From Macrostomum hystrix (Eukaryota; Animalia; Platyhelminthes): a stretch of DNA of 64,000 bases. Shown piece by piece: positions 24,777 through 48,073 of this stretch. The stretch's first letter is position 1; each line of letters starts with the position of its first letter. Made by a program: the position numbers and the translations under genes. The DNA lies in the NCBI GenBank assembly GCA_950097015.1, contig CATNEN010000013.1, positions 744,001 through 808,000 of the forward strand. Reading direction: 5' to 3'. The notes beneath the pieces were generated by a model that was not told the DNA's origin, did not search any database, and worked only from the letters and a program-made list of their open reading frames with translations.

Positions 24777-27700
24777 ATGCTGCTCTGTCGCGTGCGGCTG
24801 CAGTTCATCAGCGCAGCTGCCAGTCGGACTAGCCGACAGCTAAGCAGCTCTCTGGTTAGCTCGGCAACAATAACTGACTCAACTGATGAGTTTCAATTCG
24901 GCAAGCTGGCCCGTCAAAACAAAGGCAATCGCCGATTAGAGGGCAAACAGCAACGACAAGCTACGGCGAGGGCGTCATTAGCTGCCTCGGGGCCTATGTC
25001 AACGCCTAGCCAAAGGCCCGGATCCATCGACCGCTTCGGATCCGACGATAGCGGCCGATTCGAATTCGGCGCCCTGGCTCGCACCAGCAGCCTGATTGAC
25101 GCCGATCCGGAGATGGCCCGCTTCGACATGGATCTCAGCCTGGAGGAGGCCGCTGACGCAATGTTGGACCAGCCGGACGCTACGGCAATCTTAGACGATG
25201 ACGATCGACCCGATCATAGGCCGTTGGCGCGCGTCGGACGAAAACATGACGAAGCCTGGTATCTGCGGCGCATCGACAAGCTGGCCGAGGCGGGCGACAC
25301 TGCCGGCATTGTGCGCCTGCTGCATCGAGATATGATTGGAGAGGATCGCTACCTGCCCACTAGGCGGATTCTGCACTCCGTGATGCGTCATCTGGCCTCG
25401 GTTGGCGCCTACGAAGAGGCCAAGGCTGCGCTCAACAGGTGAGAATCCGAACAGCTTTTGCAACAGGTGACGACTGAAACGCTTCTCTGACAACTAAAGC
25501 GCTTCTCTGACAACTGAAGCGCTTCTCTGACAACTGAAGCGCTTCTCTGACAACTGAAGCGCTTCTCTGACAACTGAAACGCTTCTCTGACAACTAAAGC
25601 GCTTCTCTGACAACTGAAGTGCTTCTCTGACAACTGAAGCGCTTCTCTGACAACTGAAGCGCTTCTCTGGCAACTGAAGCGCTTCTCTGGCAACTGAAGC
25701 GCTTCTCTGACAACTGAAGCGCTTCTCTGGCAACTGAAGCGCTTCTCTGACAACTGAAGCGCTTCTCTGGCAACTGAAGCGCTTCTCTGACAACTGAAGC
25801 GCTTCTCTGACATCTGAAGCGCTTCTCTGACAACTGAAGCGCTTCTCTGACAAATGAAGCGCTTCTCTAACAAATGAAGCGCTTCTCTGACAACTGAAGC
25901 GCTTCTCTGACAAATGAAGCGCTTCTCTAACAAATGAAGCGCTTCTCTAACAATTCGAGCCCTTCTCTAACTCTAACTCTAAAGCCGCCTCCAAGAGAAC
26001 ATCAACATCGTTCATGTGACCCAACTCAACTGCAAGCTAATTAAAAAGTGCCGCTAGTTATTTTAGAACCCTCTTTTAACACACGTCTAGGTGCCGTTCG
26101 GCCGGCCTCGAAGCAAACTATGTAACTCATTGTCACTACCTGCGCGCGCTGTCAAATGCCTCCTGCTTTGACGGCAAACCGGATCGTTACGCTGGCGAAC
26201 TGGCTTGTCGCTATTATCACTCTCTGCTAGATGATGCATCAGCGCAGTCCGAGTTACTGCATCAATACGTGTACTACTTTGCTGTGCTAGCCTGCGCCAG
26301 AAATGGAATGGTGCAAGAGGCACTTAAGGTCTGTTGATGCTCGCTGTTTTTACTCCCTGTCTCCTATTGACAATAATCTATAATCTGAATGTATAATCCA
26401 CCGATTATAGATATTCGACGACTCAGTTAACCTGGCCCAGCTTCATCCGCCGCCAAAGATGCTGGACGCCCTGCTGCACGCGGCCTACACCGACAAGACT
26501 AATGGCAGCGCCATCGCCCTGCTGGTTTGGCGACGCTTTCGTCTGGCGTTTGGCAGTAGCCTTGACGCCTATCACTATTATCGGCTGATCAGGTGTGCGC
26601 CTTGCCCGTGTTTTGACACATTAGTGTGAATTTCATGCACCTGCGCATTGTAATAAAACTGTATGCTTGTGACGCTAACTTCAATAAACCTCCGCTAACT
26701 TCAATAAACCTCCGCTAACTTCAGTAAAGAATAAACATCCGCTAACTTCAATTAACATCATCTAACATCAATAAACCTCCACTAACTTCAATAAACATCC
26801 ACTAACTTCAATAAACATCCGCTAACATCAATAAACATCCGCTAACTTCAATAAACATCCACTAACTTCAATAAACATCCACTAACTTCAATAAACATCC
26901 GCTAACTTCAATAAACATCCGCTAACTTTAATAAACATCCGCTAACTTTAATAAACATCCGCTAACTTTAATAAACATCCGCTAACTTCAATTAACATCC
27001 GCTAACTTCAATTAACATCCGCTAACTGAGTAAACCTCAGTTAACTTTAGTAAAGAATAAACATCAGCTAACTTCAATAAACATCCGCTAACATCAATAA
27101 ACATCCGCTAACTTCAATAAACATCCACTAACTTCAAAAAACATCCACTAACTTCAATAAACATCCGCTAACTTCAATAAACATCCGCTAACTTTAATAA
27201 ACATCCGCTAACTTTAATAAACATCCGCTAACTTCAATAAACATCCGCTAACTTCAATTAACATCCGCTAACTGAGTAAACCTCAGTTAACTTCAGTAAA
27301 GAATAAACATCATCTAACTTCAATAAACATCCACTAACTTCAATAAACATCCGCTAACTTTAATAAACATCCGCTAACTTCAATAAACATCCGCTAACTT
27401 CAATAAACATCCGCTAACTTTAATAAACATCCGCTAACTTTAATAAACATCCGCTAACTTCAATAAACATCCGCTAACTTCAATAAACCTCCGCTAACTT
27501 CAGTCTTCAATAAACATCCGCCAATCCGCCAATCCTCTGACCCAGATGCCTTCGAGGCTGCGGCATCGGCCAGCCGAGCCTGATGGCCGCTGCCGAGGCG
27601 TCCGCCGGACCGCCTGTCAAAGCCGCTCTGCCGTCTTACGATCAGCTAGGAGGCGATGGTCGCACCCCCGGCGACTACAAAGGAGCAGACGCGGCGCTGC

Positions 27701-28749
27701 GCCGCCTACAGGACAACTGGTCAGCCCAGTTGAACACTCAGAAGGCTCCAAAGCTAGTGGGCTCGACAGGCCCCAAGGTCGTCTCTGAGCAGTTGCCATG
27801 GGAAACGCCAGAGTCAACGTCCTCATATTTGCAAGTCCCGGCTCAGCCGTCGCAGCCGGAGCCGGACTTCTCTCTTCCAGCGCAGCCGCCTGTGGCACTG
27901 GCGTTGAGCTGCCCCGTCAATCTTCTGCGCCCGCGTCAGCCGCTGCCAATCCTGCCAGATTCGCAAAATGCTTTCCGGTTGCCATGGCAACGCCTGACCC
28001 TAGTCGGCGGCTTAGCCGGCCTGCTGGAATCGATGCAGGCTGACAGAGCCAAGGCGACTCCGGCGCTGGCCCTGGAACTGTTGCAGCTGCTGCCGCCACT
28101 ACCCGAGGCTGAGCAGACCATCTGGCGCTTCTGTCGCAGCCGCGGCTTCCTCCGAGCCTCCACGCCAGGCGGTGGCGTCGTATTCTACAATGCCCTGCTG
28201 CGCTACCGGGTGCGCAACCGTCTGGAGCACGCCGATGTGCTGGACGAGCTGCGATCCAGCGGACTGCGGCCCGACCGCGACACCTACGCCGCACTGGCAG
28301 GCGCGTGCCGCGAACAGCGCGAAGCCGAACGCCTCCTAGCCGACATGGCGCGCGACTCGGCCAGGCCAGACCAGCTGGTGTTCTACGCCATGCTGACTGC
28401 CGCTCAGCCCGGCGACCTGGCCTACCGGACCTGGCTGGTGCGCCGCATGGCCGGCTTTGATGTGCCGCCCAGCCCGGCCATTGTGCGCTTGCTGGAGACC
28501 GACCTAGCCAGGCACCGGGCCAGCTTGTCTAAGCAAGACAGCTCTGCCGGATCGTCGGCACACGGCCTGTCGCTGGCCTCTCAATCGGCTTCTGTGAGTC
28601 CGGTGGATTCGGCCGATTATCAGCTGTTCCGGTCGGCCTACGAATCCTGGCTGAAGGCCAACAAGCTGTTCCAGCCCATTAATTCTATTAAATCTGAGCG
28701 AATGCGGCTCAAGCATGTCCGACTGAAGTCTTTGAAAATGGCCAGTTAG
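24777..28749 (+). CDS. PTCD1: Mitochondrial pentatricopeptide-repeat protein, PTCD1-like (exons 24777-25438, 26091-26328, 26411-26592, 27546-28749)
   Basis: Basic/Ser-rich transit-like N-terminus, EFG/FG acidic region, W-Y..I..L...G motif and PPR repeats (FYNALL..., DTYAALAGAC). GT-AG phases 2/0/2 join in frame. Confidence 0.78.
25473..25955. repeat. 20-bp minisatellite GCGCTTCTCTGACAACTGAA in PTCD1 intron 1
   Basis: About 24 tandem units visible. Confidence 0.95.
26676..27520. repeat. 20-bp minisatellite AACTTCAATAAACATCCGCT in PTCD1 intron 3
   Basis: About 40 tandem units with interruptions. Confidence 0.95.
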
Positions 28750-28859
28750 ATTTCTGCTGTACAATTCTGTGTTAGTGACGGATCAACTGGGATTATTGTA
28801 GAACCTAGAACCAGAACTTGGCGACCTTTTTGATAATAATAGTTATTATTAGCTAATTA

Positions 28860-30075: not shown

Positions 30076-31055
30076 TTAGTCGTTCGCCTTCTCTCCGTCT
30101 CGACGTCGCTGTTCTGCTTCTTTAGACTTCTTCTCCACCTTGTCGTTGTGCTGGCTGACTCGCTGCAGCTTCTCCTGCTCCCTTTTCTGGCCGTGATGGA
30201 AATCGAACGATAATAAACGTGCAATTTACGCCAATGAGGGTCAGCCCTTCACAGTAAGTGCACACTGCCTGACAATGAGAGTCCGGGCAGATGTGCACTC
30301 TTTAGCACGTCCTGTTTTAGCTCGTATAAAGTAACAAACAAAATAAGCCTCGTGGGCGTAATATTGCACGCACGACCGGCCCCAAATTTACGAGTATGCA
30401 TGGCCTCGCCGCGGAACTCCCGGTACTGTAGTGATAATAATATAATAATAATTGCAGGAGGGCTGCAGCGAGAAGTTCGACATTTAGTGACACTAGAACT
30501 GCAGCCAGTAGGGAGGCAATTTTGCCCATTTCGCATATGGACTCCTGAGCGCACACGCACACAGATACCGGACGCAGGCATACGCTCACACAGGTGTGTA
30601 CATCTGCCCCGACTTTCTCATCGTCAGGTAGTGTACACTCTCACTGTGCCTTGGAGGTTGGCCCTCAAAAGCATAAATTGCACGACAAGCCTCTAAGCCT
30701 TCTCTCTGCGGCTGCACCCCAAATGAAATGTGGCCTCGCCGCGGAATCGAGCTCAGGGACCTTGGTGCGAGAAGCAAACGCGTTGACCGCTCTGCCACTC
30801 ACGCTCCTAAGAGTACCTTGGAGCCTCTAAAATTTGCCATACTATTCATTAACTCGAGACCCGATGCTTTCGCTCTGTAGATTGTCTCACCTTTCGTCGC
30901 TCCTCAGCCTCCCGTTGTCTCTTGTCGATTACGTCGGGTGTTGAGGGTCGGTCTTCGAGACGCCGCTCCAAATGACGCGGCTTGCCGCTGCGCGATTTAA
31001 TGTTATCCTCGTCTATGCTCACCTCGAACGCCATGCTGGTATTTCGGCCCGACAT
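30076..31055 (-). CDS. Stathmin-like protein, ~91 aa (exons 31055-30891 and 30186-30076)
   Basis: MAFEV..., STPDVIDKRQREAEERRK|KREQEKLQRVSQHN.. match the stathmin AFE and coiled-coil motifs. Phase-0 GT-AG intron. Confidence 0.75.
30250..30648. mobile_element. Non-autonomous DNA transposon with CAC...GTG termini and 4-bp TSD (Chapaev/CMC-like)
   Basis: TIRs of ~50 bp: CACAGTAAGTGCACACTGCCTGACAATGAGAG / revcomp CACAGTGAGAGTGTACACTACCTGACGATGAGA. CCTT at 30246-30249 and 30649-30652. Confidence 0.75.
30660..30807 (-). mobile_element. tRNA-derived SINE
   Basis: The minus strand shows A-box TGGCAGAGCGG (30787-30797) and B-box-like GAGCTCGATTCC (30743-30754) at tRNA spacing. Confidence 0.6.
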
Positions 31056-33727: not shown

Positions 33728-34985
33728 TAAATCCTTATCTGTACATTCAAAGCGCACTGCCTTAAAAAATCTTTGTTTCCTTGCATATCATGGACTACAG
33801 AGGAAGATAGGATAATTCCTAGTCCTAAACCTAGATCCTAAGTTTATGTACTTGACTTACATACTAGGCATGAAGAAAACTTTCGTATTCAGAAAGCGAA
33901 GTGAATATGTTAAGATATTGTAGTGGTATTTAATATAATTTGTTTAAATAAACAGTAGATTCATGTCGCCACAGGACTTTAGCTATTATAATAATCAAAT
34001 CAAGTTATGTATAAGTTATGTATTAATTCTTTACAAGTTGTTTTCTATGGCATAGATTCTTAAAATGCAATCATGTTGCAAGTATAGTTTACTTTTGACA
34101 CTCGTTATTATCAGTTATCTTTAATTTTCAGCTAACAAAAGTTAGAAAAATATTTACTTCTTTTTGCAGATAGCATAAAATTATAGTAAGTTACCATAGA
34201 TTTTATGGTGCCTATGTGCTAGCCAGCCAATCAGTTTTTACTTTCTTTTGCCCCTGTTGATCAAATGAGAAAACTGGCAAAGTAATGACAAAATGGTAAA
34301 TGTCTTTCTTGTTGTATTTTAGGTACAGACATCCAGAAAAGTTTCAATGAATAAATATAGCATATTAGATTATGTTAAAAGCTTTCATGTAGCTTTCTTT
34401 TTATTTTTTTTTTATCTTTATTGTATCAGCTTTAGTATTCTCATATGAATTAACACACACACATACACACAAACACACTTAGAAAAAATGATATATTAAA
34501 ATAAAACATTATTAGGGATATATTTCAGATCTGGTTTAACATCATCAAAGTCTTTTATTGAACTCTTAATTAATATTTATATGACTGGTTCTAAATTCTG
34601 TTATCTATTTTGTTATAAAAATAAAATAATTTTTTCCCTTTCTCTTATCAAACAGTATTATTTTATAGTTGAATTTATAATCTTTTTACTTATATAGAAA
34701 TTATTGCCATTTTTTTTTCATTTTGCTAAATTAAACATTTCAGAAGAATGTCTGCTTTTTAAGGAGACTAAGAAAACAAAAGTTGTTTTGCTACTTTAAA
34801 TAAAAAATTTTCTGTTTTTTAGCCAGAATTATTTTTTTCTGAAAAAAACTTGTTTGCTTTTCTATTTTCTTTCTTTTATATTAAGATTCTAAACTGCAAT
34901 GGCCATTGTAGGTTTTTTTGTACATGAAAGCATGATAAACATTGTATAACATCTTTTGAATTCCAATTTAAAACCCAAGTTGCAG

Positions 34986-35733
34986 CAGGAAGTGGCTCAA
35001 AGTGGCATCCTTGAGGCCCAGCTGGGCCGGGGAGGGCCTGGCCAGGTGCAGCAGCAGCAGCAGTCTCATGAAGACCGCAGCCGCACCAATCTAATCATAA
35101 ACTATTTGCCGCAGACATTCGACACTGAGGATCTGCGCGCCTTATTTGAAAAGGCCGGGCCGATCCGGACACACAAGGTTGTGCGCGACAAGCAGACTGG
35201 CGCCTCGCTCTGCTATGGCTTCGTTGACTTCCTGTTTCCCGAGCACGCCGAGAAGGCCATCGGCGAGTTTCACGGCATGAGGCTGGGCAACAAGAAGCTG
35301 CGCGTTGCCTACGCGGCCACTGGCAGCAGCTCCTGCGCCGGCTTTGTTGGTCCCGATGGCTCGCCGCTGCCACTGCCGACCATGCCGCCTCGCGCCGAGC
35401 GTCACAGCGGTGGTGCCGGCTCCGGTGTCGGCAATGGGGGCAGCTTCATCGGCGGCGGTGGCGGCCTCTGCGGCTCAGGCAGCGGCGGTTCCGCGCTGCC
35501 GTTGCGCAATCCCGGCAATCTGTACGTGTCCGGCATTCCGCGCAGCTGGACCGAAGCCGATCTGAACGCGCTATTCTCCAGATTTGGCAAGCTGGTTCAG
35601 ATCCGCGTGCTGACAGATCCCAACAGCGGCCTGTCCAAAGGAGTCGGCTTCGTCACCTTCGATGACAAGGGCAACGCCGAGAGGGCCATAATTGAAACTA
35701 ACGGGCTGCAGGTAGGCAAATGCGGGGCTTGAA

Positions 35734-35766
<33 letters not shown>

Positions 35767-37910
35767 GTGTGTGTGTGTGTGTGTGATTCATTCCTGCAAT
35801 TTCCAAAGTGGCGTGCAACTAATAACCACCCAGGTGACTGTCCCTGTGTTACTTTGGCTTTACTCTACTGTTGCCTCACAGTCGCTAGGCTGTAATTATC
35901 CTATTTTTGGGGGGATTTTATGGCGTTTAAACCGCTAGAGGGACTCAGATAAGATAACGATCCACGCGACGATTTTAGGGCGCGCTTAGAGAGCGATTAG
36001 CATCTGCTTCCCAAATCTTTCTAGCAGCTAAACTATGCCAGCTAACACACGGTTTGACAAATTTATATGCCTTGCCAACTAAACAGAGAACGAATTTAAT
36101 AGACGACATCGGGCCGGATCAACATAGAGGACTAAAAACAGAGGATAGATGAGACGTAGGAGAGATGAGTAAGGTGAGAGATAATACCAGGGACAGATAA
36201 GGCAGTAAAGACAGGGGAGAAATGGGAAATGGTCATGGAAGGTGAGATATGAGAGAGATTAGGAAAGATTAGATAGGAGACGAGAAATTAGGTTCGAGAG
36301 GTGAGACCGGAGAGGTTAGACATGAGAGATTGAATAAGAAAGTTGAGATAGGATGGACGCAGTTGCCCGACTCCTGATCTGATCCAACCCAATCTTCACC
36401 GTCTATTCAACTTTTTTAAAGAATAATTCCGCAATGAGTTCTTTACTCAATAGTAAATATTAGAATAGTGTGTGCGTCATCGCCTAGTACAGTAATCACT
36501 ATTTATAGACCAATCTAGATGGGATGGAGAGAGAGTGTGGCTGGGTGGGCTTTTGTTGCCCCTCCGTTCGATCAATAGACCCCAGTTGCCTCCCTTTGCT
36601 ATGCCATCCACCGCCGTGCAATTTTCGTGTCTCCTTCTCTGCCCTCTCTCTTCGTAGTTGAAGGCGTATGTCAATGCCTCTCAGACTTAAATTGAGTAAC
36701 CAGACTAAACCCAACCCAGCTTAAGCTTTCCTGCAACACTGACTCATTGTACTTAGGCGCATCATTGTTAGTGGGTGGACGCCTAGATGAAGTAGCCAAC
36801 ACGCACAAAAGAAGTTTCCAGTACGTTTCTGGTTTGTTGAAAATCTTTTACAAGCTTTGGTTGTTCGTCTGTACTGTAAGAAGCGGTCATTATTGTTGAG
36901 ATTCCATTGTTCGCGCTAGGCTTGTCTGTCTAGCCTAAATTATCTAATAGGTTGGCATTGTGAGTGCGCCTGCTTTCCCACGCGAGTTCATAGTTAAATG
37001 CGCGACATGATTTTAACTTTTTTCCTCTCCTAAAAGAAGATAGACGAACAAGATGACCGATATTAAGCAGAGTAGAGTAGTGTGCTCAATGTGAAGCCTG
37101 GGAGAAATTCACGCGATGAGACAGTGCTCAGCATGTGCCAAGCACAATACAGTATTGTATTGTTTCCTGCTGAACCATACAAATGTGATTATTAATGTGT
37201 CTGTCACTTCTGGATGTCTAATACTCTTTCAGAATTGGTCAGCACCCAATAAAAAATTAACTATTACGGTTTTATAGTAGACACTGAAGCACTGGGTCTC
37301 AGGGTTTTATAGTACACTGAAGCACTGGGTCTCAGGGTTTTATAGTACACTGAAGCACTGGGTCTCAGGGTTTTATAGTACACTGAAGCACTGGGTCTCA
37401 GGGTTTTATAGTACACTGAAGCACTGGGTCTCAGGGTTTTATAGTACACTGAAGCACTGGGTCTCAGGGTTTTATAGTACACTGAAGCACTGGGTCTCAG
37501 GGTTTTATAGTACACTGAAGCACTGGGTCTCAGGGTTTTATAGTACACTGAAGCACTGGGTCTCAGGGTTTTATAGTACACTGAAGCACTGGGTCTCAGG
37601 GTTTTATAGTACACTGAAGCACTGGGTCTCAGGGTTTTATAGTACACTGAAGCACTGGGTCTCAGGGGTTTGTTTTACCCGACCAACCTCCTCAGGGCCC
37701 AGAATGGCCGGCTCCGCTGCTGGTGAAATTCGCCGAGGATGGCTCGGCCAGGGCCCGCTCCGGACCGCGCCACGCTGGGCTGTCAGCTTCGTTCAACCTG
37801 CCGCTGGACACCGGGCGTCAGGGCGGCTCCGGCGCCTGCCGACTGAGCGCCAGCCTGTGCGGCCCGTCCAGCTCAGCCATGAACGGATCTTCGGGCTTCA
37901 GCTCCGGCGG
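34986..37910 (+). CDS. ELAV/Hu/Sxl-type RRM1-RRM2 exons (34986/34989-35711 and 37696-37910); N-terminal exon not identified
   Basis: TNLIINYLPQ...SLCYGFVDF...KKLRVAYA and NLYVSGIP...SKGVGFVTFD...NGLQ|GPEWPAPLLVKFA. Phase-0 GT-AG junction. The ORF-track start is TTG, not ATG. Confidence 0.9.
35734..35785. repeat. (TG)n microsatellite
   Basis: Read directly. Confidence 0.95.
37266..37667. repeat. 33-bp minisatellite GGTTTTATAGTACACTGAAGCACTGGGTCTCAG, ending ~30 bp before a splice acceptor
   Basis: About 12 near-identical units. Confidence 0.95.
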
Positions 37911-39496: not shown

Positions 39497-42400
39497 TGTA
39501 GGAATTGTGAAACGCGACTGTTTGTAGTAGTCGATAGCCGAAATAACATAAGAGCGAATAATATGCGATACAGTATATTTTATTATAAAATCTGAGTTTG
39601 AGCTGGGGTGGCGGCTAAAGCCGCACCCCGTACATTAGCTAACGTGCGTGCCAAGGGGGGAGAGAGGCGGCAGAGAGAAAGAACGTAGAACGCCGCCAAC
39701 CCCACGCACGCGTGACGGCTGGCGCCGCCTACACTTCTCCCCCCCAAAGGAATAAAACGAAATAGGAAAAAACTAAACTTTGAACACGAGATTAACAGTT
39801 CAGATGATAGAAACTTAATGAATGATTAGAGCACAATTCCTTAGTTACTTGTACCGCTTAGGCTTGTCACGGGCAGCTCTAGGATGGCGTCTCAGTGCCA
39901 CGGCATCATTTTCCTGACCAGTATCCTGGCCGACAGGCGGAGGCGTGCCGGCAGGCGGAGGTGGGCCGGCAGGCGGGCCGGCAGGTGGGCCGGCAGGCGG
40001 GCCGGCAGGCGGGCCGGCAGGCGGGCCGGCAGGCGGGCCGGCAGGCGGGCCGGCAGGCGGGCCGGCAGGCGGGCCGGCAGGCGGGCCGGCAGGCGGGCCG
40101 GCAGGCGGGCCGGCAGGCGGGCCGGCAGGCGGGCCGGCAGGCGGGCCGGCAGGCGGGCCGGCAGGCGGGCCGGCAGGCGGGCCGGCAGGCGGGCCGGCAG
40201 GCGGGCCGGCAGGCGGGCCGGCAGGCGGGCCGGCAGGCGGGCCGGAAGGCGGGCCGGCAGGCGGGCCGGCAGGCGGGCCGGCAGTCGGGAAAATTGGTCG
40301 TAGCTGAGTCACGTGTCGCATGCAGGACTGTTGGCCTCGTCGTAGGATGCAGGTGTCGCCTCGAACCTCTTCTACCGTCCAAGGCTGGGTCTCGAATGGC
40401 AGCTGAGTTTTGATGCGTGTCTGCTGCTTTCGGAGAACCATTGTGCCGGGAACTACTCTGTGCTCCTTGGCGGTGTTGCGCTTGTCAAAGGCTCGCTTCA
40501 TTTCGCGCGTGTACTGCCGACTCCAGTCCCTCACGGCTTGATGGTCGCATCCAGTCACAGTTGGCTGCCGAATAGCCGGGATTCCGTCGTTGATCGCCCT
40601 GCCCATGAGTAGCTCGGCCGGGGTGCGTCCTGTGGCTCTGTGTGGCGTGGTGCGGAATGCCAGTAGCCAGTCGTCTAGGGCCTCTCTCCAGTTCCGGCCC
40701 TCAGCAATCGCCGTCTTGATCACCTTGCCGATACTGCGGTTGACGCGTTCGGTGGCTCCGTTGGACTCCGGGTGCAGCGGACAGATAAGCCGGTGATGAA
40801 CCCCATAATCGGTGAGGAAGTTGCGAAATTCAGCGGAGTTGAAGGGCGGTCCGTTGTCCGTAATGACCTCCGCAGGAATTCCGTGGCGACTGAAGAGCCG
40901 TCTCAGGTGCGGTGTCACGCTGCCGGCCGTGGTTGACTGCATTACGTCGACTTCTGGGTATTTGGAGTACAAGTCGGTGGTGACGAGCAGCATGTGACCT
41001 TGCACCGGACCGTAGAAGTCCATGCCGAGCAGCTGCCAAGGCCCGTCGGGCATTTCCGTCGGCTTTAGAGGCGTCTGCTGCACGTGCGTTGCCGCTGCCT
41101 GACAGTAGATGCAGCACTTGACAAAGACTTCGCAGTCGCTGTACATTTTGGGCCACCAGACCTTGGTTTGCAGGCGCTTGAGAGTCCTGTCCGCCCCGAG
41201 GTGTCCGGTGTGAGCCAGCTGCAGGATCGGCCTCCGCAGTGCCTCGGGGATGACGATGAGATCTCCGCGAAGCAGGACGCCGTCGTTCTCGGTTAGTTCG
41301 CTGCTGATGGACTTGAATGAGCGTTGCACCGGGCTGAGAGTGTTCCAGTTGCCGGTTCTGATCGCGCCGAGTGCAGCCTGCATTTCCGCATCAGATCTTG
41401 CAGCCTCTCTGATCTTTTGGATTGTGAAGCCCTTTGGCACGGCACCAGTTGATACAGCGTTGACGTGGGCTTCATCGATGACCTCGCCGATGTTTGGCCT
41501 CGACTCCGGCAGCGGCTGGCGGCTAAGCAGATCGGCTGGATTTGCTGGTCCCGGCCTGTACAACAGAGTAAAGCGGAGGTGCTGGATGCGGAGGGCCATT
41601 CGCTCGATCCGCGGCGGTGGGCGGGAACCCGGCTTGAACAGTGGAACGAGGGGCCGGTGGTCCGTCACAACGGTGAAGTTCGGGTCGCCTGCCAGGTAAT
41701 GTTCGAATTTCAGGCAGGCGAACTTGATGGCCAGCGCCTCCCGCTCAATCTGCGCATACCGCTGCTCCACCGGCGACAGAGCTCTGCTGGCATAGGCCAC
41801 GGGCCGGCTGCTGCCGTCTGGCTGCTTCTGGGTGAGAATGGCGCCGAGTCCGATCGGAGATGCGTCCACCAGGAGCTCCGTGTGCCGCTTGCGATCGAAG
41901 AATGCTAGCGTGTCGGCGTTGGCAATTGCACTTTTGATGCTGTTGAATGCCTTGGTGTGGCTGTCGGTCCATTCCCACGGCTGGCCCTTTTTAGTCAGTT
42001 GGCGCAGCGGGGCTGACACGTCAGCGTATCCAGAAATAAACTTCGCCAGAAAGTTTGCTGTGCCGAGGAATGACCGTATTTCTGAGACATTGGCGGGCTG
42101 CCGGAAGTCCTGCATTGCTTGGATCTTCTCGGCAGCTGGTTGGATGCCCTTGGCTGACATATGCATTCCGAGGAAGTCGACTGCTGGCTTGGCGAACTTG
42201 CACTTGTCTTTGTTCAACGTGATGCCAAACTCGCGGAGGCGTTGAAGACATAGATCCAGTCTTTCATGATGTTGTTTGATATCTGCGGCGTACACGATGA
42301 CATCGTCATGGACCCACCTGACGCCGTCAATGCCGCTGAGGATGCCTAGCATAACCCGTTGAAGGATTTCTGAGGCGTTGGTAAATCCCATGCTCAGCCG

Positions 42401-44396
42401 CTTCAGTCGCATCAGTCCGAGCGGCGTGCTGAATGTGAACAGATGTCGGCTGTCTTCGTGCACGGGGATCTGATAGAAAGCTTTCCGGATGTCGAGCTCG
42501 CTGAAAAGCTTGGCTCCAGACATCTCCTCGGTGACTTCGTCCAGTGTCGGGATCTGCTGCTTTTCCGGAACAACGAAGGCGTTCAAGTCGCGAAGGTCTT
42601 GGCATATTCTGACGCCGCCGTCCGCCTTGGGCACTACGACCATGCGTGCCACCCAGGCGCTGGGTCCCTTGACTGCTTCGATGATGTCCTGTCGCTCCAA
42701 TGCCTTCAGCTCGTCCACCACGGTTGCTCTTAGATGCGCCGCTACCCGGGAAGGCGCGTGGCAGACTGGAACGGCGTCGCCTGACAGCTGCACTTTCACC
42801 TGCACGCCCTTGATGCATCCGATGCCTTCGAAGACTTCTCTGTGACGGTGCAGGATGTCTTGCAGCTGCGGTGACAATCCCGCTGTGCTGTTTGAGTGCA
42901 CGGCTTCCGTCTCGCTCGAATCGGGGCGCTGGATTTTGAGCACTCCTAGTCTGAATGCGGGCTCGCGACCGAGAATCGTCAGGCCGTCACCATCCATGAT
43001 GTAGAACGGAGTGACGGTGCTGGCTGATCCAACGTGGACTTGTAAGTCGGAGACACCCAGGATCTTCAGCGGTGAGGCGCAACCGTAGGCTCGCACCTCG
43101 GATTTTGGAGCTCGCAGATGCGGCCGGCGGAGGGTCTTGAAGGTGCATTTGCTCATAATGCTGCAGCTAGCTCCGCTGTCAATCATCATCGGGAGCTGCT
43201 GATCTCCCACTCGGATTTTCAGCGAGACGTCAGGCGGATAGATGCCTTCCCTGTGCAGTGTGAACACGTCTTGGCTGGAGGTGTCACCAGGAGCTGTGCG
43301 GTATGCGTTGGCGTGAATCTGCTGTTGGACTCTGTTGCTGCTTAACCGCGGCTGGCGGCAAGCCTTTGCTAGGTGGTTTGGCTTGCCGCAGTTGTGGCAG
43401 ATTTTGCCCTTGGCTGCGTCACAGGAAGCGTGGCCGCGCTCGCCGCAGCGGTAGCAAGTCTGTGACCGGCTCTGCCTGGCCTCGCTGTGTGGCGTGCGTT
43501 TGTCTGACGCTGTTTGGCTTCTATTGGCCACGCTGGCCACCTGCGACTCGGTGGTCTTCTCCATCTCAGCAGCCTGTTCTTCCGCAGCTTCGAATGCTCT
43601 GGCCTTCCGCAGCGCGTCTTCCAGTGAGATGTTTGCTTCCTGGAGCAGCCGTCTGCGCAGCTTGTCGGAGGTGCATGTAGCAACAAGTTGGTCTCGGATG
43701 AGGGAGTCGCGTAAGTCGCCGAATTCACATGGTTCAGCAGCCGTCCGCAGCCTGCTGTACCAAGCTTCGATTTTCTCACCAGATTGTTGGACACACAGAC
43801 GGAACTGGTATCGAGCGTAAACGATGTTCTTTCTATCGTCGAAGTGTTGCCTCAGTCCCTTGAAGATGGTCTGCAGTGTGTGTTCCTGCTCCTGGCCGTC
43901 GGCGTCAGACCTGGGCTTTGGTAGTTCCCGAATGATGTCCGAGACTTCCTTTCCGGCCGTGTAGCAGAGCAGCTTGCATTTTTGGTTTTCATTGGCAATT
44001 CCGGATGCCTCAATAAAGTCTGCGAATCGCGCTGCCCATTCGTTCCAACGTTTGCCCGCGTTGTGCGGGTCGTGAGTAATGAGAAATGGCTCGGGTGGAG
44101 GTAGAGAAACGTAGCTTGTGGCCATGCCCCGCGTTGGCTGCGATGGCTTGCGATGCCACTGTAGGAATTGTGAAACGCGACTGTTTGTAGTAGTCGATAG
44201 CCGAAATAACATAAGAGCGAATAATATGCGATACAGTATATTTTATTATAAAATCTGAGTTTGAGCTGGGGTGGCGGCTAAAGCCGCACCCCGTACATTA
44301 GCTAACGTGCGTGCCAAGGGGGGAGAGAGGCGGCAGAGAGAAAGAACGTAGAACGCCGCCAACCCCACGCACGCGTGACGGCTGGCGCCGCCTACA
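39497..44396 (-). mobile_element. Full-length Ty3/Gypsy LTR retrotransposon
   Basis: 237-bp LTRs at 39497-39733 and 44160-44396 (TGTAGG...CCTACA), identical by eye. 5-bp TSD ATACA, PPT GGGGGGGAGAAG next to the 3' LTR, and PBS-like TGGCATCGC after the 5' LTR. Confidence 0.97.
39845..44125 (-). CDS. Single gag-pol ORF (CCHC, protease DSGA, RT WVHDD, RNase H, integrase) with a PPAG-repeat tail
   Basis: Uninterrupted ORF with Gypsy domain order RT-RH-IN. The likely start is MATSYVSLPPPEPF at 44125; the ORF-track start at 44212 lies inside the LTR. Confidence 0.95.
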   Translation of the reverse strand: MATSYVSLPPPEPFLITHDPHNAGKRWNEWAARFADFIEASGIANENQKCKLLCYTAGKEVSDIIRELPKPRSDADGQEQEHTLQTIFKGLRQHFDDRKNIVYARYQFRLCVQQSGEKIEAWYSRLRTAAEPCEFGDLRDSLIRDQLVATCTSDKLRRRLLQEANISLEDALRKARAFEAAEEQAAEMEKTTESQVASVANRSQTASDKRTPHSEARQSRSQTCYRCGERGHASCDAAKGKICHNCGKPNHLAKACRQPRLSSNRVQQQIHANAYRTAPGDTSSQDVFTLHREGIYPPDVSLKIRVGDQQLPMMIDSGASCSIMSKCTFKTLRRPHLRAPKSEVRAYGCASPLKILGVSDLQVHVGSASTVTPFYIMDGDGLTILGREPAFRLGVLKIQRPDSSETEAVHSNSTAGLSPQLQDILHRHREVFEGIGCIKGVQVKVQLSGDAVPVCHAPSRVAAHLRATVVDELKALERQDIIEAVKGPSAWVARMVVVPKADGGVRICQDLRDLNAFVVPEKQQIPTLDEVTEEMSGAKLFSELDIRKAFYQIPVHEDSRHLFTFSTPLGLMRLKRLSMGFTNASEILQRVMLGILSGIDGVRWVHDDVIVYAADIKQHHERLDLCLQRLREFGITLNKDKCKFAKPAVDFLGMHMSAKGIQPAAEKIQAMQDFRQPANVSEIRSFLGTANFLAKFISGYADVSAPLRQLTKKGQPWEWTDSHTKAFNSIKSAIANADTLAFFDRKRHTELLVDASPIGLGAILTQKQPDGSSRPVAYASRALSPVEQRYAQIEREALAIKFACLKFEHYLAGDPNFTVVTDHRPLVPLFKPGSRPPPRIERMALRIQHLRFTLLYRPGPANPADLLSRQPLPESRPNIGEVIDEAHVNAVSTGAVPKGFTIQKIREAARSDAEMQAALGAIRTGNWNTLSPVQRSFKSISSELTENDGVLLRGDLIVIPEALRRPILQLAHTGHLGADRTLKRLQTKVWWPKMYSDCEVFVKCCIYCQAAATHVQQTPLKPTEMPDGPWQLLGMDFYGPVQGHMLLVTTDLYSKYPEVDVMQSTTAGSVTPHLRRLFSRHGIPAEVITDNGPPFNSAEFRNFLTDYGVHHRLICPLHPESNGATERVNRSIGKVIKTAIAEGRNWREALDDWLLAFRTTPHRATGRTPAELLMGRAINDGIPAIRQPTVTGCDHQAVRDWSRQYTREMKRAFDKRNTAKEHRVVPGTMVLRKQQTRIKTQLPFETQPWTVEEVRGDTCILRRGQQSCMRHVTQLRPIFPTAGPPAGPPAGPPSGPPAGPPAGPPAGPPAGPPAGPPAGPPAGPPAGPPAGPPAGPPAGPPAGPPAGPPAGPPAGPPAGPPAGPPAGPPAGPPAGPPAGPPAGPPAGPPPPAGTPPPVGQDTGQENDAVALRRHPRAARDKPKRYK

Positions 44397-44571
44397 ATAC
44401 ACATTTAATAAAAAAAGTAAAATGATCCCTTTCGTTTTGTTTAGCTTAGTGTCTTTAAATTAAAAGTGTATTTGAATATATAGCTTGCATTTTTAAGTTT
44501 ATCACAGTGCCCAGGGGTCAATTATTTGCATGGGTTTCTAAAAACATCACTATCTATGACACTGACAGTAG

Positions 44572-45190
44572 TCTAAAGTCATTATCTATGGCTGGAGTCT
44601 CAAGTCATTATCTATGGATGGAGTCTCAAGTCATTATCTATGGCTGGAGTCTAAATCATGATCTATGGCTGGAGTCTAAATCATGATCTATGGCTGGAGT
44701 CTCAAGTCATTATCTATGGCTGGAGTCTCAAGTCATTATCTATGGATGGAGTCTCAAGTCATTATCTATGGCTGGAGTCTCCAGTCATTATCTATGGCTG
44801 GAGTCTCAAGTCATTATCTATGGCTGGATTCTAAAGTCATTATCTATGGCTGGAGTCTAAATTATGTTCTATGCCTCTAGTCTAAATCATGATCTATGGC
44901 TGGAGTCTAAAGTAATTATCTATGGCTGGAGTCTAAAGTAATCTATGGCTGGAGTCTAAAGTCATTATCTATGGCTTGAGTCTAAAGTAATTATCTATGG
45001 CTGTAGTCTAAAACCATTATCTGTGGCTAGTCTAAAGTAGTTATCAATGACAGGTGTCTAAGTAATTATCTATGACAGGTGTCTCAAGTAATTATGTGTC
45101 AGGTTTTTTAAGTAATTATTTGTGACAATAAAGTAATCATCTATGGCAGGTGTCAAATTATATATTTATGGCAGGTGTCTAAAGTAGTTA
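44572..45190. repeat. 26-bp minisatellite AAGTCATTATCTATGGCTGGAGTCTC, decaying 3'-ward
   Basis: Tandem units visible. Confidence 0.9.
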
Positions 45191-45255
45191 TCAGATTTAT
45201 TAAGAATCTTATTTGAAAAGAGCATTCATTCTCTTCCGCATTGGTTCCTTATCAG

Positions 45256-48033
45256 ATTCGGTCTAAGCCGACTACTCGACTCTGACAGTCCCACCGGTGG
45301 CGGCGGCGGCGGCTTCGGCTTTGGCGGCACGCACGCTGGCATTGAAGAGATGGTGGACAGTTTGCTAATGCTGAACGCTCTGGGCACGCAGAACGCCTTT
45401 CGCACCCTGACTGGCGGCGCCAGTAACGGCGTCGGACTGGGCAGTATCGGCACCGGCCACCGGCCGCCCGGCCACAAGGAGATCACCTCCGACCTGGACG
45501 TGTCGCTCTCCAGCAACGGCTCCAGCCTTGATTCGCCGCCGCACGACGCCCTGACTGCCCTGTCCCAGCTGGGCCTGCTGGACCCGGAATTGGCCGCTGC
45601 AGCTTCGGCCGGCGTGGCGCCCGCTCCGGCGCCATTGCACATCCGCACGCCGCTAATTGAGAGCCGACCGCTGGCCCGGGCACTCGGCATCAAAGGCTGC
45701 CGTGTGTGGATCAAACTGGAGAACTGTCAGCCAACTGGCTCCGTCTGTCTGCGTGGCATGGCCAACGCTGTGCGACGCGCCGCCGAGAGGGGTTTCACAC
45801 ACGTGAGTGTCATAGTTATTTGATTCCCACAGTTCTTTGATCTTGCCGCCAGGATACCCTAATTAGTTGTTTGATGTTTCCACCATGCTTCTAACTGGTT
45901 CTTAGATTTAGCTGCCGCTTATCCAGCCGGTCTTTATCTTGCCGCCGCACGTCTAATCGGTTCTTTGATCTAACCGACGAACTTTTAATCGGTACTTTGA
46001 TCTTGCCCCCACACTTCTAACCAATTATTTTATCTTGCCGCCACGACGATTCCCTAATTAGTTTTTTTATGTTTCCACCATGCTTCTAACCGGTTCTTAG
46101 AGTTTGCCGCCAATTTTCTAGCCGGTTTTTATTTTACCGCCGTACTTGTAACCGGTTCTATGATCTTACCGACGCATTTAAACTGGTTATTTCATCTTGC
46201 TTCCACACTTCTAACCGTTTCTTTGATCTTGCCGCCCATTTTCTAACCGGCTGTTTGATCTTAGCGCCGCACTTCAAACCGGTTATTTCACCTTGCTGCC
46301 ACAATTCTATCCGTTTCTTTGATCTTGCCACCACACTTCCCACCAGTTCTTTGATCTTGCCGCCTCACTTCCCACCAGTTCTTTGATATTGCCACCTCAC
46401 TTCTAACTGTTTATGTTATTTAGCCGCTTATTTTCTAACCGGCTGATTGATCTTACCGCCGCACTTCGAATCGGTACTTTCATCTTGCCGCCGCATTTCC
46501 CAACAGTTATTTATCTTTTGAACGTATCGCTCTCTTTTTTATAATTTCTCTGGGATTTATTTAAACTTTTCTCGCCAAAAGAAACCTTGTCTGTTAAATA
46601 GGCTTTAAATATTTTTTCTGCTTTCCATGACTTTAAAACAAATTTCTGCGTCATCGTTCGTGGGTAAACGGGGCAGTACCTAGAACGCGACAAGTTTAGA
46701 AATGTATCCTCAATAATAACTAGCTAACAAAATGGTTCATTCGACCAGCGAATTGTTCAACAGGCTTGCAACGATAAAAAGCAGAGCTGCAAATTGCAAC
46801 GAACGCAAATATAAATTCATTTTGATCCGCTTTGCGGACATTGTGAACAGAAATGTTTTTTTTAACAAGCGAATTTTGTGCGAAAAAAAACGATTTAAAG
46901 ATGCTGAATCTGAATTCCTTCGCATTCATTCCTTGCTGTTAACGTGCTTTAACAATTTTAGCTAGAATTCTAGTTGCATATCTTTTTATCAAGCTTTCTA
47001 TTTAAGCTATTTCGTCAATTGTATGCAATGTGCCTCTGCTACATATTTTTATAGAATTTTAGTCCATTTCTGCGTGAATATTTTTATTCCGAATCATGAG
47101 AATAGATATCCCCATTTTGGGAGAATCTGAGTTCAAATGAATTTTTTTATTAGGGATAATATTTATTGCTCTAAATTTTACTGTTATCCCAAAATGACAC
47201 CTGCACCTCCAGGTCGTGACAAGCAGCAGCAGCAGTGGCAACTGCGGCCTCGCCTGCGCATACGCGGCTGCCCGTCTGGGCCTTCAGTGCACTGTGGTGC
47301 TGCCCGACCCGCTGGCATGCGGCCCCGGCTCTGGCTCCGCTGCTAGCGGCTGCTTAGCCGAAGAGGTCCGCGCGCGCATCGCCGACGAAGGCGCCCAGGT
47401 TGTGCTGGCTGGCTCGGCCTGGCCGGAGGCGCACGCCAGAGCCGAAGTCCTGGCCAATCAGCTGGGCCACTGCGCCTGCCTGCTGCATCCCTTCGATAGC
47501 GAGGACGTCTGGGCCGGCTACAGCGGCCTAGTCGACGAAGTGGCCGAGGCGCTTAACGGCGAACAGCCGGACGCTGTCGTCCTACCCGTGTCCGGAGGTG
47601 GCCTGCTGTCTGGCATTGTAGCCGGCCTGTGGCGCTACGGGTGGGTGACAACGCCGATTATTGCTGCCGAAACACGCGGCGTTGATCATCTGGCCGCGGC
47701 TCTGGCTGGCGGCGGCGGCGGTGGCGGTGGCGGCCGTCCTTGCCAGCGCGCTCTGGAGGCGGCAGGTGAGCAGCCGCTACACGCGGTGGCCAGCAGCCAG
47801 GAGGAGGCAGCCAGGGCCTGTGTGAGCTTCCTTGGCCAGCATCAGCAGCTGACGGAGCCAGTCTGCGGAGCCGCCTTGGCCGCTGTGTACAACCGACAGT
47901 TTGGGCCGCAGCAGCTGCTGACCAGGCCTCACCCAGCTAACATCATCGTGCTCGTCACTGGCGGCCGCTCCGTGGGGGTTCAGCAACTGTTTGAACTGGC
48001 TGGAGGCTCCCCGCAGCCGCCATCGCCACTGCC

Positions 48034-48068
<35 letters not shown>

Positions 48069-48073
48069 CTTAG
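45256..48073 (+). CDS. Low-complexity linker plus serine/threonine dehydratase-like domain (exons 45256-45802 and 47213-48073), probably the C-terminus of the RRM gene
   Basis: PLHIRTPL...VWIKLENCQPTGSVCLRG, SSGNCGLACAYAA, HPFD...WAGY, SGGGLL and EPVCGAALAAVY match SDS/SDSL motifs as recalled. The phase-0 junction FTH|VVTSS is in frame. Confidence 0.88.
45835..46510. repeat. Degenerate ~39-bp tandem repeat (TTGATCTTGCCGCC..TTCTAACCGGTT)
   Basis: Recurring motif in the SDS-domain intron. Confidence 0.75.

What the first reader, a model, noticed from the sequence alone, without database searches (positions are those of the whole stretch)
45722..45760. The SDS-like domain lacks the Schiff-base lysine: probable pseudoenzyme
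Seen: the motif reads QPTGSVCLRG, with codon TGT at 45746-45748. Established: SDS has QPSGSFKIRG, whose Lys (K41) forms the PLP aldimine and is essential. Other PLP-pocket motifs are kept (SSGN, SGGGLL, EPxCGAALAA), while the segment after ETRG..HLAAAL is replaced by a Gly run. Inference: the fold is retained without catalysis, perhaps as a ligand-sensing or dimerisation module replacing RRM3.
Basis: partly seen in the sequence, partly recalled or inferred. Interest (0 to 1): 0.78.

Follow-up and report, generated by a model that had tools for sequence, protein, structure and literature searches.

The report
ELAV-type protein carrying dead serine dehydratase
A flatworm gene joins two RNA-binding modules to a serine-dehydratase-shaped domain that has lost the lysine doing the chemistry, yet is expressed and kept by selection, so an enzyme fold has probably been reused for a non-enzymatic job.

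Summary
Codon 45746-45748 is TGT (Cys), at the exact position of the PLP Schiff-base lysine of human and rat SDS/SDSL (QPTGSVCLRG against QPSGSFKIRG). Spliced contigs from two independent studies cover the exon with no differences, so this is not an assembly error. The gene has at least four exons: 34980-35711, 37696-37910, 45256-45802 and 47213-48073. It encodes an ELAV/Hu-type RRM pair, a conserved hinge and a C-terminal SDS-like PALP domain.

The nearest orthologue is in Macrostomum lignano, at a syntenic locus. It has the same Cys with a synonymous codon (TGC), the same Phe-to-Val change, and the same loss of about 21 residues of the substrate loop. dN/dS for the PALP domain is 0.17, against 0.06 for the RRM exon. 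An AlphaFold model of the orthologue's domain is confident and matches SDS (TM 0.82-0.85).

The RRM+PALP fusion occurs across Platyhelminthes. Most trematodes keep the Lys. Cestodes have Val or Leu, and Trichobilharzia szidati has Glu, giving at least three independent losses. M. lignano also has a stand-alone SDS that keeps the Lys.

Verdict: a real, selected pseudoenzyme domain. Its role (dimerisation or ligand sensing) is inferred, not tested. The scan already noted the same build on another piece of this genome (s1-344270).

The parts
34980..35711 (+). Exon A: RRM1 and most of RRM2 of an ELAV/Hu-type pair. Acceptor AG at 34978-34979, donor CAG|gtaggc, phase 0. The 5' end of the gene was not determined.
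   Evidence: Pfam RRM_1 4.4e-36 with two stretches. Best PDB hits are HuD 1fxl at 3.5e-38 and HuR 4ed5. 85% identical to M. lignano L001 9986-10690, dN/dS 0.058.
37696..37910 (+). Exon B: end of RRM2 (GPEWPAPLLVKFAEDG) and the start of the hinge. Acceptor at phase 0, donor GG|gtgagc at phase 2.
   Evidence: Frames and splice sites were read. Its last 30 bases are the loose end that precedes exon C in the spliced contigs of X2 and X5. The first 43 aa are 100% identical to P0003.
45256..45802 (+). Exon C: conserved hinge, then the N-terminal part of the PALP domain (from PLHIRTPL at 45632). Donor CAC|gtgagt, phase 0.
   Evidence: Contigs of X2 and X5 cover 45255-45804 with 0 differences and then run on into exon B and exon D sequence. 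PALP 1.2e-10. dN/dS 0.075 for the whole exon and 0.03 for its PALP part.
45728..45757 (+). Motif QPTGSVCLRG, the counterpart of the PLP-lysine motif QPSGSFKIRG. Val 45743-45745 replaces the Phe and Cys 45746-45748 (TGT) replaces the Schiff-base Lys.
   Evidence: M. lignano has the identical peptide, with synonymous differences at Gly, Val, Cys and Arg.
47213..48073 (+). Exon D: the rest of the PALP domain, a poly-Gln tail and the stop TAG at 48071-48073. It contains no Lys.
   Evidence: PALP 4.9e-38. Best PDB hits are SDSL 2rkb at 3.4e-33 and SDS 1pwe, 4h27, 1p5j. The loose end after exon C in X2, X5 and X9 matches its start. dN/dS 0.22.
47306..47365 (+). Macrostomum-specific insert (DPLACGPGSGSAASGCLAEE region) after the VVLP strand. 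It is variable between the two Macrostomum species.
   Evidence: Gap in all other homologues.
47678..47746 (+). Gly-run segment (GVDHLAAALAGGGGGGGGGRPCQ). It replaces about 21 residues that include the 'ITS(V/I)A.SLGA' loop of active homologues.
   Evidence: Alignments. This is the only internal low-confidence stretch of the orthologue's model, residues ~221-240.
47234..47242 (+). Retained S-G-N of the asparagine loop (SSGGNAG in SDS).
47588..47614 (+). Gly-rich phosphate loop VSGGGLLSG (VGGGGLL in SDS; the first Gly is Ser here).
   Evidence: Identical in M. lignano.
47855..47884 (+). Retained EPVCGAALAA motif (EPACGAALAA in SDS).
   Evidence: Identical in M. lignano.

Best explanation
The window comes from a Macrostomum-like free-living flatworm. 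This is inferred from 76-85% protein identity and conserved gene order with M. lignano. The finding lies in an expressed multi-exon gene whose product has three parts: an ELAV/Hu-type RRM1-RRM2 pair, a conserved hinge, and, in the place of RRM3, a serine-dehydratase-type (fold type II PLP) domain.

Shown:
- The domain keeps the SDS fold.
- It has Cys for the Schiff-base Lys and Val for the preceding Phe.
- It lacks about 21 residues of the loop that active homologues carry after the ETxGA motif.
- It has no substitute Lys.
- It is spliced and transcribed as predicted.
- It evolves under purifying selection.

Inferred: it cannot carry out the canonical PLP-dependent beta-elimination and acts as a non-catalytic module of an RNA-binding protein.

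The most likely role (about 45%) is self-association or scaffolding. SDS-family proteins are homodimers, and ELAV RRM3 is the multimerisation module that is missing here. Retained binding of PLP or a small ligand is the second option (about 20-25%).

The fusion is ancient in Platyhelminthes and was probably catalytically competent at first, because most trematode orthologues keep every key residue. Catalysis was then given up at least three times: in Macrostomum, in cestodes and in Trichobilharzia szidati. In Macrostomum this went together with a separate stand-alone SDS that still has the Lys.

The confidence given (0.72) is for the reading 'expressed, selected, catalytically dead domain with a non-catalytic role'. 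The specific role is less certain, as stated above.
For: - Lys-to-Cys at the aligned position.
- TGT confirmed with 0 differences in spliced contigs from two studies, whose loose ends match exon B and exon D.
- The M. lignano orthologues P0003, P0152 and P0153 have the same QPTGSVCLRG and the same loop deletion, with the Cys codon TGC against TGT.
- The locus is syntenic: the upstream PPR gene is colinear.
- dN/dS is 0.058 (RRM exon), 0.105 (hinge) and 0.17 (PALP, bootstrap 0.12-0.24), at dS about 0.8-0.9.
- The AF2 model of P0003:433-760 has pLDDT 90.6 and pTM 0.89. Only the Gly-run loop is uncertain. Foldseek top hits are human and rat SDS and SDSL, TM 0.80-0.85.
- RRM_1+PALP proteins occur in Schistosoma, Trichobilharzia, Heterobilharzia, Dicrocoelium, Paragonimus, Opisthorchis, Clonorchis, Echinostoma, Fasciolopsis, Spirometra and Mesocestoides (the Fasciola gigantica prediction P0162 is N-terminally truncated). 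The motif states are K in most, V or L in cestodes and E in T. szidati.
- At least 3 losses are needed on the tree, and a single clade of the fusion domains is not rejected, p-AU 0.28.
- The stand-alone M. lignano SDS P0006 has GSFKIRG.
- On the tree the Macrostomum fusion branch is twice as long as its Lys-bearing sister, 1.03 against 0.52.
- There is no alternative Lys-bearing exon in the window, and exon D has no Lys.
- A precedent exists for an inactive fold-type-II PLP module kept for a structural role: the N-terminal module of C. elegans CBS-1 (PMC3316156).
- RRM3 has a role in ELAV multimerisation, as cited in PMC2795745.
Against: - No biochemical test exists. Loss of activity and of PLP binding is inferred from sequence only.
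- Several PLP-pocket motifs are still conserved (SGN, SGGGLL, EPVCGAAL). That fits ligand binding at least as well as a pure scaffold role, although these motifs may simply be structural.
- The window's own joined protein was not folded. The model is of the orthologue, which is 72-81% identical over the PALP exons.
- Dimerisation was not modelled.
- The run kinds of X2 and X5 are guesses. Their spliced contigs and about 0.45 word share point to RNA.
- Only two Macrostomum species support the selection estimate.
Confidence: 0.72

Rival explanations
1. Ligand sensor. The domain still binds PLP non-covalently, or an amino acid or other small molecule, and couples vitamin B6 or amino-acid status to RNA binding by the RRM pair.
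For: The phosphate loop (SGGGLL), the Asn of the SGN loop and the EPVCGAAL motif are retained and identical in two species separated by dS of about 0.85. The N-terminal PALP segment around the former Lys is almost invariant, dN/dS 0.03. From general knowledge, Lys-less mutants of some PLP enzymes still bind the cofactor.
Against: The loop that homologues use next to the substrate is deleted, and the ring-stacking Phe is Val. The cestode Mesocestoides also degrades the Gly loop to GCGS, which suggests the pocket is not under general constraint once the Lys is lost. No binding data exist.
Confidence: 0.22
2. Still an enzyme. The domain catalyses some reaction by non-canonical chemistry, for example with Cys as a nucleophile or with PLP bound as an external aldimine only.
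For: Strong purifying selection and a conserved Cys with a synonymous codon change. The pocket motifs are kept.
Against: Other lineages put Val, Leu or Glu at the same site, so no particular chemistry is conserved there. The substrate loop is deleted. From general knowledge, the Schiff-base Lys is also the general base in this family.
Confidence: 0.06
3. Decaying remnant. The PALP exons are a non-functional tail on the way to being lost.
For: Loss of Lys, an insert, a deletion replaced by a Gly run, and a long branch on the tree.
Against: The open frame is intact across two exons in two species. Splicing is correct in transcripts. dN/dS is 0.17 with an upper bootstrap bound of 0.24. The fold model is confident.
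Confidence: 0.03
4. Artefact. The Cys is a sequencing or assembly error, or the RRM and PALP parts belong to two separate genes.
For: None found.
Against: Contigs from two studies have 0 differences and join exons B, C and D. The X2 contig (1857 nt) extends 968 nt upstream of exon C, which matches exons B plus A in length; this is an inference from lengths. Independent gene predictions in more than 10 flatworm genomes carry both PF00076 and PF00291.
Confidence: 0.01

Closest known systems
Animal L-serine dehydratase / SDS-like (SDS, SDSL; PDB 1p5j, 4h27, 1pwe, 2rkb), fold type II PLP enzymes
   Same: Best sequence and fold match: 3.4e-33 for exon D, and TM 0.82-0.85 for the orthologue's model. 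The SGN loop, the Gly-rich phosphate loop and the EPxCGAAL motif are retained.
   Different: The Schiff-base Lys is Cys and the preceding Phe is Val. About 21 residues of the loop after ETxGA are deleted, and there is an extra 14-20 residue insert. The domain sits at the C-terminus of an RNA-binding protein rather than standing alone.
ELAV/Hu family RNA-binding proteins (HuD 1fxl, HuR 4ed5; Sxl 3sxl)
   Same: A tandem RRM1-RRM2 with Hu proteins as best hits (3.5e-38), followed by a hinge.
   Different: There is no RRM3; a PALP domain follows the hinge. It is not melav2 of M. lignano, which is 422 aa with three RRMs (PMC2795745).
Uncharacterised platyhelminth RRM_1+PALP proteins, annotated 'L-serine ammonia-lyase' or 'serine dehydratase-like' (e.g. 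M. lignano PAA73106.1, Dicrocoelium CAH8561352.1, Mesocestoides VDD76155.1)
   Same: Same architecture. The Macrostomum proteins are orthologous and syntenic. The RRM1 signature GASLCYGFVD(F/Y) is shared, with 65% identity to Dicrocoelium RRM1.
   Different: Most trematode members keep the Lys and the full substrate loop. Macrostomum has the most degraded site. I found no paper describing the family.
N-terminal inactive module of C. elegans CBS-1 (PMC3316156)
   Same: A fold-type-II PLP module that cannot bind PLP or catalyse, kept within a larger polypeptide for a structural role.
   Different: There it pairs with an active copy of the same fold in one chain. Here the partner is an RRM pair, and the active copy is a separate gene (seen in M. 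lignano).

Membership tests
SDS/SDSL-type L-serine/threonine ammonia-lyase (fold type II PLP enzyme) | PALP fold and sequence homology to SDS/SDSL | tested here: met
   PF00291 at 1.2e-10 and 4.9e-38. PDB best hits are SDSL and SDS. The orthologue's model has TM 0.82-0.85 to 4h27, 1pwh and 1p5j.
SDS/SDSL-type L-serine/threonine ammonia-lyase (fold type II PLP enzyme) | Schiff-base lysine in the motif (S/T)GSFK(I/L)RG | tested here: not met
   Cys (TGT, 45746-45748) aligns with the Lys. Transcripts confirm it. No alternative Lys is available.
SDS/SDSL-type L-serine/threonine ammonia-lyase (fold type II PLP enzyme) | Aromatic residue (Phe) preceding the Lys | tested here: not met
   Val at 45743-45745. 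Phe or Tyr is present in all Lys-bearing homologues of alignment A1. Its ring-stacking role is from general knowledge.
SDS/SDSL-type L-serine/threonine ammonia-lyase (fold type II PLP enzyme) | Loop 'P.ITS(V/I)A.SLGA' after ETxGA | tested here: not met
   About 21 alignment columns are absent and replaced by a Gly run.
SDS/SDSL-type L-serine/threonine ammonia-lyase (fold type II PLP enzyme) | Asn loop (S-x-G-N), Gly-rich phosphate loop, and Cys/Ser of the EPxCG motif | tested here: inconclusive
   SGN and EPVCG are present. The phosphate loop is SGGG instead of GGGG. Whether they still hold PLP cannot be told from sequence.
SDS/SDSL-type L-serine/threonine ammonia-lyase (fold type II PLP enzyme) | PLP binding and L-Ser/L-Thr deaminase activity | not testable with these tools
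   Needs recombinant protein, spectroscopy and an enzyme assay.
ELAV/Hu family | Tandem RRM1-RRM2 most similar to Hu/ELAV | tested here: met
   RRM_1 twice. HuD 3.5e-38 and HuR 5.3e-38, ahead of Sxl at 5.4e-29.
ELAV/Hu family | Hinge followed by a third RRM | tested here: not met
   No RRM in exons B to D. The transcript contigs go from exon B to C to D. The stop codon follows the PALP domain.
Platyhelminth RRM_1+PALP fusion proteins (database entries only) | Both Pfam domains in one product, with orthology to the M. lignano gene | tested here: met
   Exon-by-exon matches to P0003 over its whole length. Colinear neighbours. In-frame splice phases. Spliced contigs.

The most novel reading that the evidence does not exclude
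In flatworms an ELAV-type RNA regulator has captured a PLP-fold domain that, after losing catalysis, works as a metabolite (PLP or amino-acid) sensor. RNA binding or multimerisation of the RRM pair would then be tuned by serine/threonine or vitamin B6 status. The repeated, independent loss of the lysine marks a shift from enzyme to sensor.
Probability: 0.15. Interest if true: 0.85.

Novelty: new variant of a known kind. Interest (0 to 1): 0.6.

Why it matters
- **An unusual, testable fusion.** Fusions of a sequence-specific RNA-binding module with a metabolic-enzyme fold are rare. This one is conserved across a whole phylum, and catalytically intact (flukes) and dead (Macrostomum, tapeworms) versions exist side by side. 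That is a natural experiment on how an enzyme fold is re-used. M. lignano has RNAi and transgenesis, so the question can be tested directly.
- **A database annotation that looks wrong.** Databases label these proteins 'L-serine ammonia-lyase' or 'serine dehydratase'. For Macrostomum and cestodes that label is probably wrong. The 'threonine deaminase' gene assumed for Echinococcus (EmuJ_001093200, PMC11795093) may belong to this family and should be checked for the same loss; I did not test this.

Tried and rejected
- **Word-index searches.** Searches with exon D and with P0003:470-779 returned only 2-3 proteins, because low-complexity words filled the candidate list. The exhaustive HMMER search and a search from the Trichobilharzia domain found the family.
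- **melav2.** I considered melav2 of M. lignano as the same gene and rejected it: it is 422 aa with three RRMs.
- **Literature.** I looked for a paper on an RRM-SDS fusion, on the M. lignano gene ids, and on PLP pseudoenzymes tied to RNA binding. None was found.
- **ESM Atlas.** The look-up of P0003 gave no usable hit.
- **Alternative exon.** I looked for an alternative Lys-bearing exon or a second PALP copy in the window. There is none.
- **Reads.** Read laying was given only 45150-45885, to stay clear of the intron minisatellites. The C-D and B-C joints therefore rest on loose-end sequences rather than on the joint table. Run X10 (organism C) gave only short low-complexity matches and says nothing about that species.
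Full report
**1. What is at the coordinates**

The + strand around 45.2-48.1 kb carries two GC-rich coding blocks separated by an AT-rich intron. Translation gives ...PLHIRTPLIESRPLARALGIKGCRVWIKLENCQPTGSVCLRGMANAVRRAAERGFTH, followed by a GTGAGT donor at 45803. After the acceptor at 47211-47212 it continues VVTSSSSSGNCGLACAY... up to the stop at 48071-48073.

Both pieces match Pfam PALP, at 1.2e-10 and 4.9e-38. phmmer against PDB chains gives SDSL (2rkb, 3.4e-33) and rat and human SDS as best hits for exon D. For exon C it aligns 'qptgsvclrg' with 'qpsgsfkirg' of human SDS, which places Cys (TGT, 45746-45748) on the PLP lysine.

So is the nine-Gly run in place of the loop that homologues have after ETxGA.

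**2. The gene**

Upstream, ORF 34956-35732 holds two RRMs (RRM_1, 4.4e-36). HuD and HuR are its best solved relatives, at 3.5e-38 and 5.3e-38, ahead of Sxl. Reading the splice sites and phases gives four exons:
- Exon A, 34980-35711, donor at phase 0.
- Exon B, 37696-37910. It encodes GPEWPAPLLVKFAEDG, the end of RRM2. Its acceptor is at phase 0 and its donor at phase 2.
- Exon C, 45256-45802. Its acceptor needs two bases from the exon before it, which exon B supplies.
- Exon D, 47213-48073.

The 7.3-kb intron between B and C holds an intact Ty3/gypsy-type element on the other strand. The 5' end of the gene was not determined.

**3. Is it real and expressed?**

One run (X1) holds 0.99 of the sampled words of 45256-48073. 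Seven other runs of the same organism, from two studies, hold 0.40-0.47, which is about the exon share of 0.50.

I laid 45150-45885 on four runs. Contigs of X2 (study P2, 2020, 1857 nt) and X5 (study P1) cover exactly 45255-45804 with no differing letter. Their overhangs are the last 30 bases of exon B on one side and the first bases of exon D on the other. X9 shows the same exon C-D junction.

So the B-C-D splicing is real and the codon is TGT in transcripts. The length of the X2 contig upstream of exon C (968 nt) equals exons B plus A plus about 20 nt. That fits one RRM-PALP transcript, but it is an inference from lengths. tblastn finds no second PALP exon in the window, so there is no alternative Lys-bearing exon.

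**4. Relatives**

An exhaustive HMMER search with exon D found one close protein, P0003: 779 aa, 76% identical, matched at residues 502-774. The ordinary SDS-like proteins follow at about 40%.

P0003 and its near-copy P0152 are Macrostomum lignano predictions. They have the same build as the window gene: RRM1, RRM2, hinge and PALP. They also share the same QPTGSVCLRG and the same shortened, Gly-rich loop.

The M. lignano locus (L001) is colinear with the window. It matches all four exons and has the same PPR gene upstream. The window is therefore from a related Macrostomum-like flatworm. This is an inference, because the organism is coded in the run table.

RRM_1+PALP proteins also occur in these flatworms:
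- Schistosomes: Schistosoma (four species), Trichobilharzia (two species) and Heterobilharzia.
- Other trematodes: Dicrocoelium, Paragonimus, Opisthorchis, Clonorchis, Echinostoma and Fasciolopsis. The Fasciola gigantica prediction P0162 groups with these fusion proteins on the tree but is N-terminally truncated.
- Cestodes: Spirometra and Mesocestoides.
- A partial PALP-only prediction from the monogenean Protopolystoma groups with the cestode fusion domains on the tree.

The residue at the lysine position differs by lineage:

| Lineage | Residue at the Lys position |
|---|---|
| Nearly all trematodes | Lys (GSFKIRG) |
| Trichobilharzia szidati | Glu (its sister T. regenti has Lys) |
| Mesocestoides | Val |
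| Spirometra | Leu |
| Macrostomum | Cys |

Both Trichobilharzia species have also lost the Asn of the G-N loop. M. lignano additionally has a stand-alone 337-aa SDS (P0006) with the intact GSFKIRG, SSGGNAG, GGGG and ITS.A.SLGA motifs.

**5. Phylogeny**

In a tree of PALP domains, all the flatworm sequences form a supported clade (99/96). The neodermatan fusion domains form a 100/99 clade. The Macrostomum fusion domain pairs with the Macrostomum stand-alone SDS at 92/83, which is not decisive, and sits on a branch twice as long (1.03 against 0.52).

Holding all fusion domains together costs 2.4 log-likelihood units and is not rejected (p-AU 0.28). The Lys state needs at least three changes on the tree. 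The simplest reading is one old fusion with a working active site, followed by independent losses. An independent fusion in Macrostomum is not excluded by the PALP tree alone. However, the RRM1 signature is shared (GASLCYGFVD, 65% identity to Dicrocoelium), and that argues for one origin.

**6. Selection**

Codon alignments of the window against L001 were made exon by exon:

| Region | dN/dS |
|---|---|
| Exon A | 0.058 |
| Exon B | 0.117 |
| Hinge part of exon C | 0.105 |
| PALP part of exon C | 0.03 |
| PALP part of exon D | 0.22 |
| PALP, counts pooled | 0.17 (bootstrap 0.12-0.24) |

dS is about 0.8-0.9. In the motif itself the Gly, Val, Cys and Arg codons differ synonymously between the species (TGT against TGC for the Cys). 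The domain is therefore maintained by selection and is not decaying.

**7. Fold**

I folded the orthologue's domain (P0003:433-760) with a 25-row alignment instead. The result has mean pLDDT 90.6 and pTM 0.89, and only the Gly-run loop (about residues 221-240) is uncertain. Foldseek ranks human SDS, rat SDS and SDSL first, with TM 0.80-0.85.

The Cys lies at the start of the helix that begins at model residue 50. From general knowledge, this is where the lysine sits in SDS.

Exon D has no lysine at all. The two lysines of the PALP part of exon C are in GIKG and WIKLE. The WIKLE Lys occupies a nearly invariant column that the Lys-bearing homologues also have. A stand-in lysine is therefore very unlikely.

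**8. Interpretation**

Shown: an expressed, selected, SDS-folded domain that lacks the Schiff-base Lys, the preceding Phe and the post-ETxGA loop, fused behind an ELAV-type RRM pair.

Inferred: it has no canonical PLP catalysis. From general knowledge, this Lys holds the cofactor and acts as the base in the family.

What the domain does instead is not shown. I favour self-association or scaffolding, for three reasons:
- From general knowledge, SDS-family proteins are dimers.
- The missing RRM3 is the ELAV multimerisation module (cited in PMC2795745).
- An inactive fold-II PLP module kept for structure has a precedent in C. elegans CBS-1 (PMC3316156).

A ligand-sensing role remains open, because the phosphate loop, the Asn and the EPVCG motif are conserved.

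The presence of a Lys-bearing stand-alone SDS in M. lignano fits a division of labour after duplication. Whether cestodes have such a copy was not tested. The Echinococcus 'threonine deaminase' gene of PMC11795093 was barely expressed and undetected as protein. It may be this family, but I did not check.

**9. Novelty and earlier notes**

I found no paper on this family. Databases name its members as enzymes. The scan's own notes already hold the fusion on this window (s1-084963). They also hold the same 'dead dehydratase on an ELAV protein' on another piece of this genome, with a follow-up that reached the same reading (s1-344270). I saw that note only after my own analysis, and it did not change it.

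**10. Limits**

- There is no biochemistry.
- Only one pairwise comparison supports the selection estimate.
- The run kinds are guesses.
- The joined protein of the window itself was neither searched nor folded.

Noticed in passing
window 39845-44212 (- strand): An uninterrupted 1455-aa gag-pol ORF of a Ty3/gypsy-type retroelement (zf-CCHC, RVT_1, RNase H, integrase zinc-binding and core domains). It has a long C-terminal (PAGP)n repeat and lies inside the intron between exons B and C of the RRM-PALP gene. It may be a young, possibly active, copy.
   Followed up: partly
window 10947-13019 (- strand); related ORFs at 7208-10229, 13301-14269, 18467-20469: A 690-aa ORF with THAP plus TNP-like RNase H and GTP-binding insertion domains (P-element-type transposase). 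Several shorter, related, broken copies lie nearby.
   Followed up: partly
window 15526-16968 (- strand): A 480-aa ORF with a FLYWCH zinc finger and a MULE transposase domain.
   Followed up: partly
window 24624-28758 (+ strand): A PPR-repeat gene in several exons. It is colinear with the gene upstream of the M. lignano orthologue (L001 1544-5269), as is a small conserved block at 30884-31043 (L001 6963-7122).
   Followed up: partly
window 44570-45095, 45888-46499, ~37280-37650, 35733-35790: The introns of the gene are full of tandem repeats. There is a 26-bp unit x20 just before exon C and a 32-bp unit x19 just after it. A 33-bp unit x12 ends about 45 bp before exon B, and a (GT)n run lies right after the exon A donor.
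   Followed up: partly
window 45259-45291 and 45470-45590 (hinge in exon C): The hinge is strongly conserved between the two Macrostomum species (dN/dS 0.105), for example HKEITSDLDVSLSSNGSSLDSPPHDALTALSQLGLL. A 'LLDSDS'-like acidic Leu-rich motif recurs in the hinge of trematode and cestode fusion proteins (LLDLLDS, ILDFLDS, ADLLDG). It may be a short linear motif.
   Followed up: no
P0161 / P0172 (Trichobilharzia szidati / T. regenti): The two sister species differ at the Schiff-base position (Glu against Lys). Both have Ser for the Asn of the G-N loop. This looks like a very recent or ongoing loss of the active site, unless it is a prediction or sequencing error in one of the records.
   Followed up: no
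run X9 (organism B), window 45419-45804: A contig labelled as another organism is identical to the window over 386 nt and shows the same exon C-D junction. Organism B is either a very close relative, the same species under another label, or a cross-contaminated sample.
   Followed up: no
trematode fusion proteins P0011, P0161, P0162 (C-terminal ends): A conserved C-terminal motif, LNPHDLVNFSKLLA, follows the PALP domain in flukes. It is absent from Macrostomum, which ends in poly-Gln.
   Followed up: no
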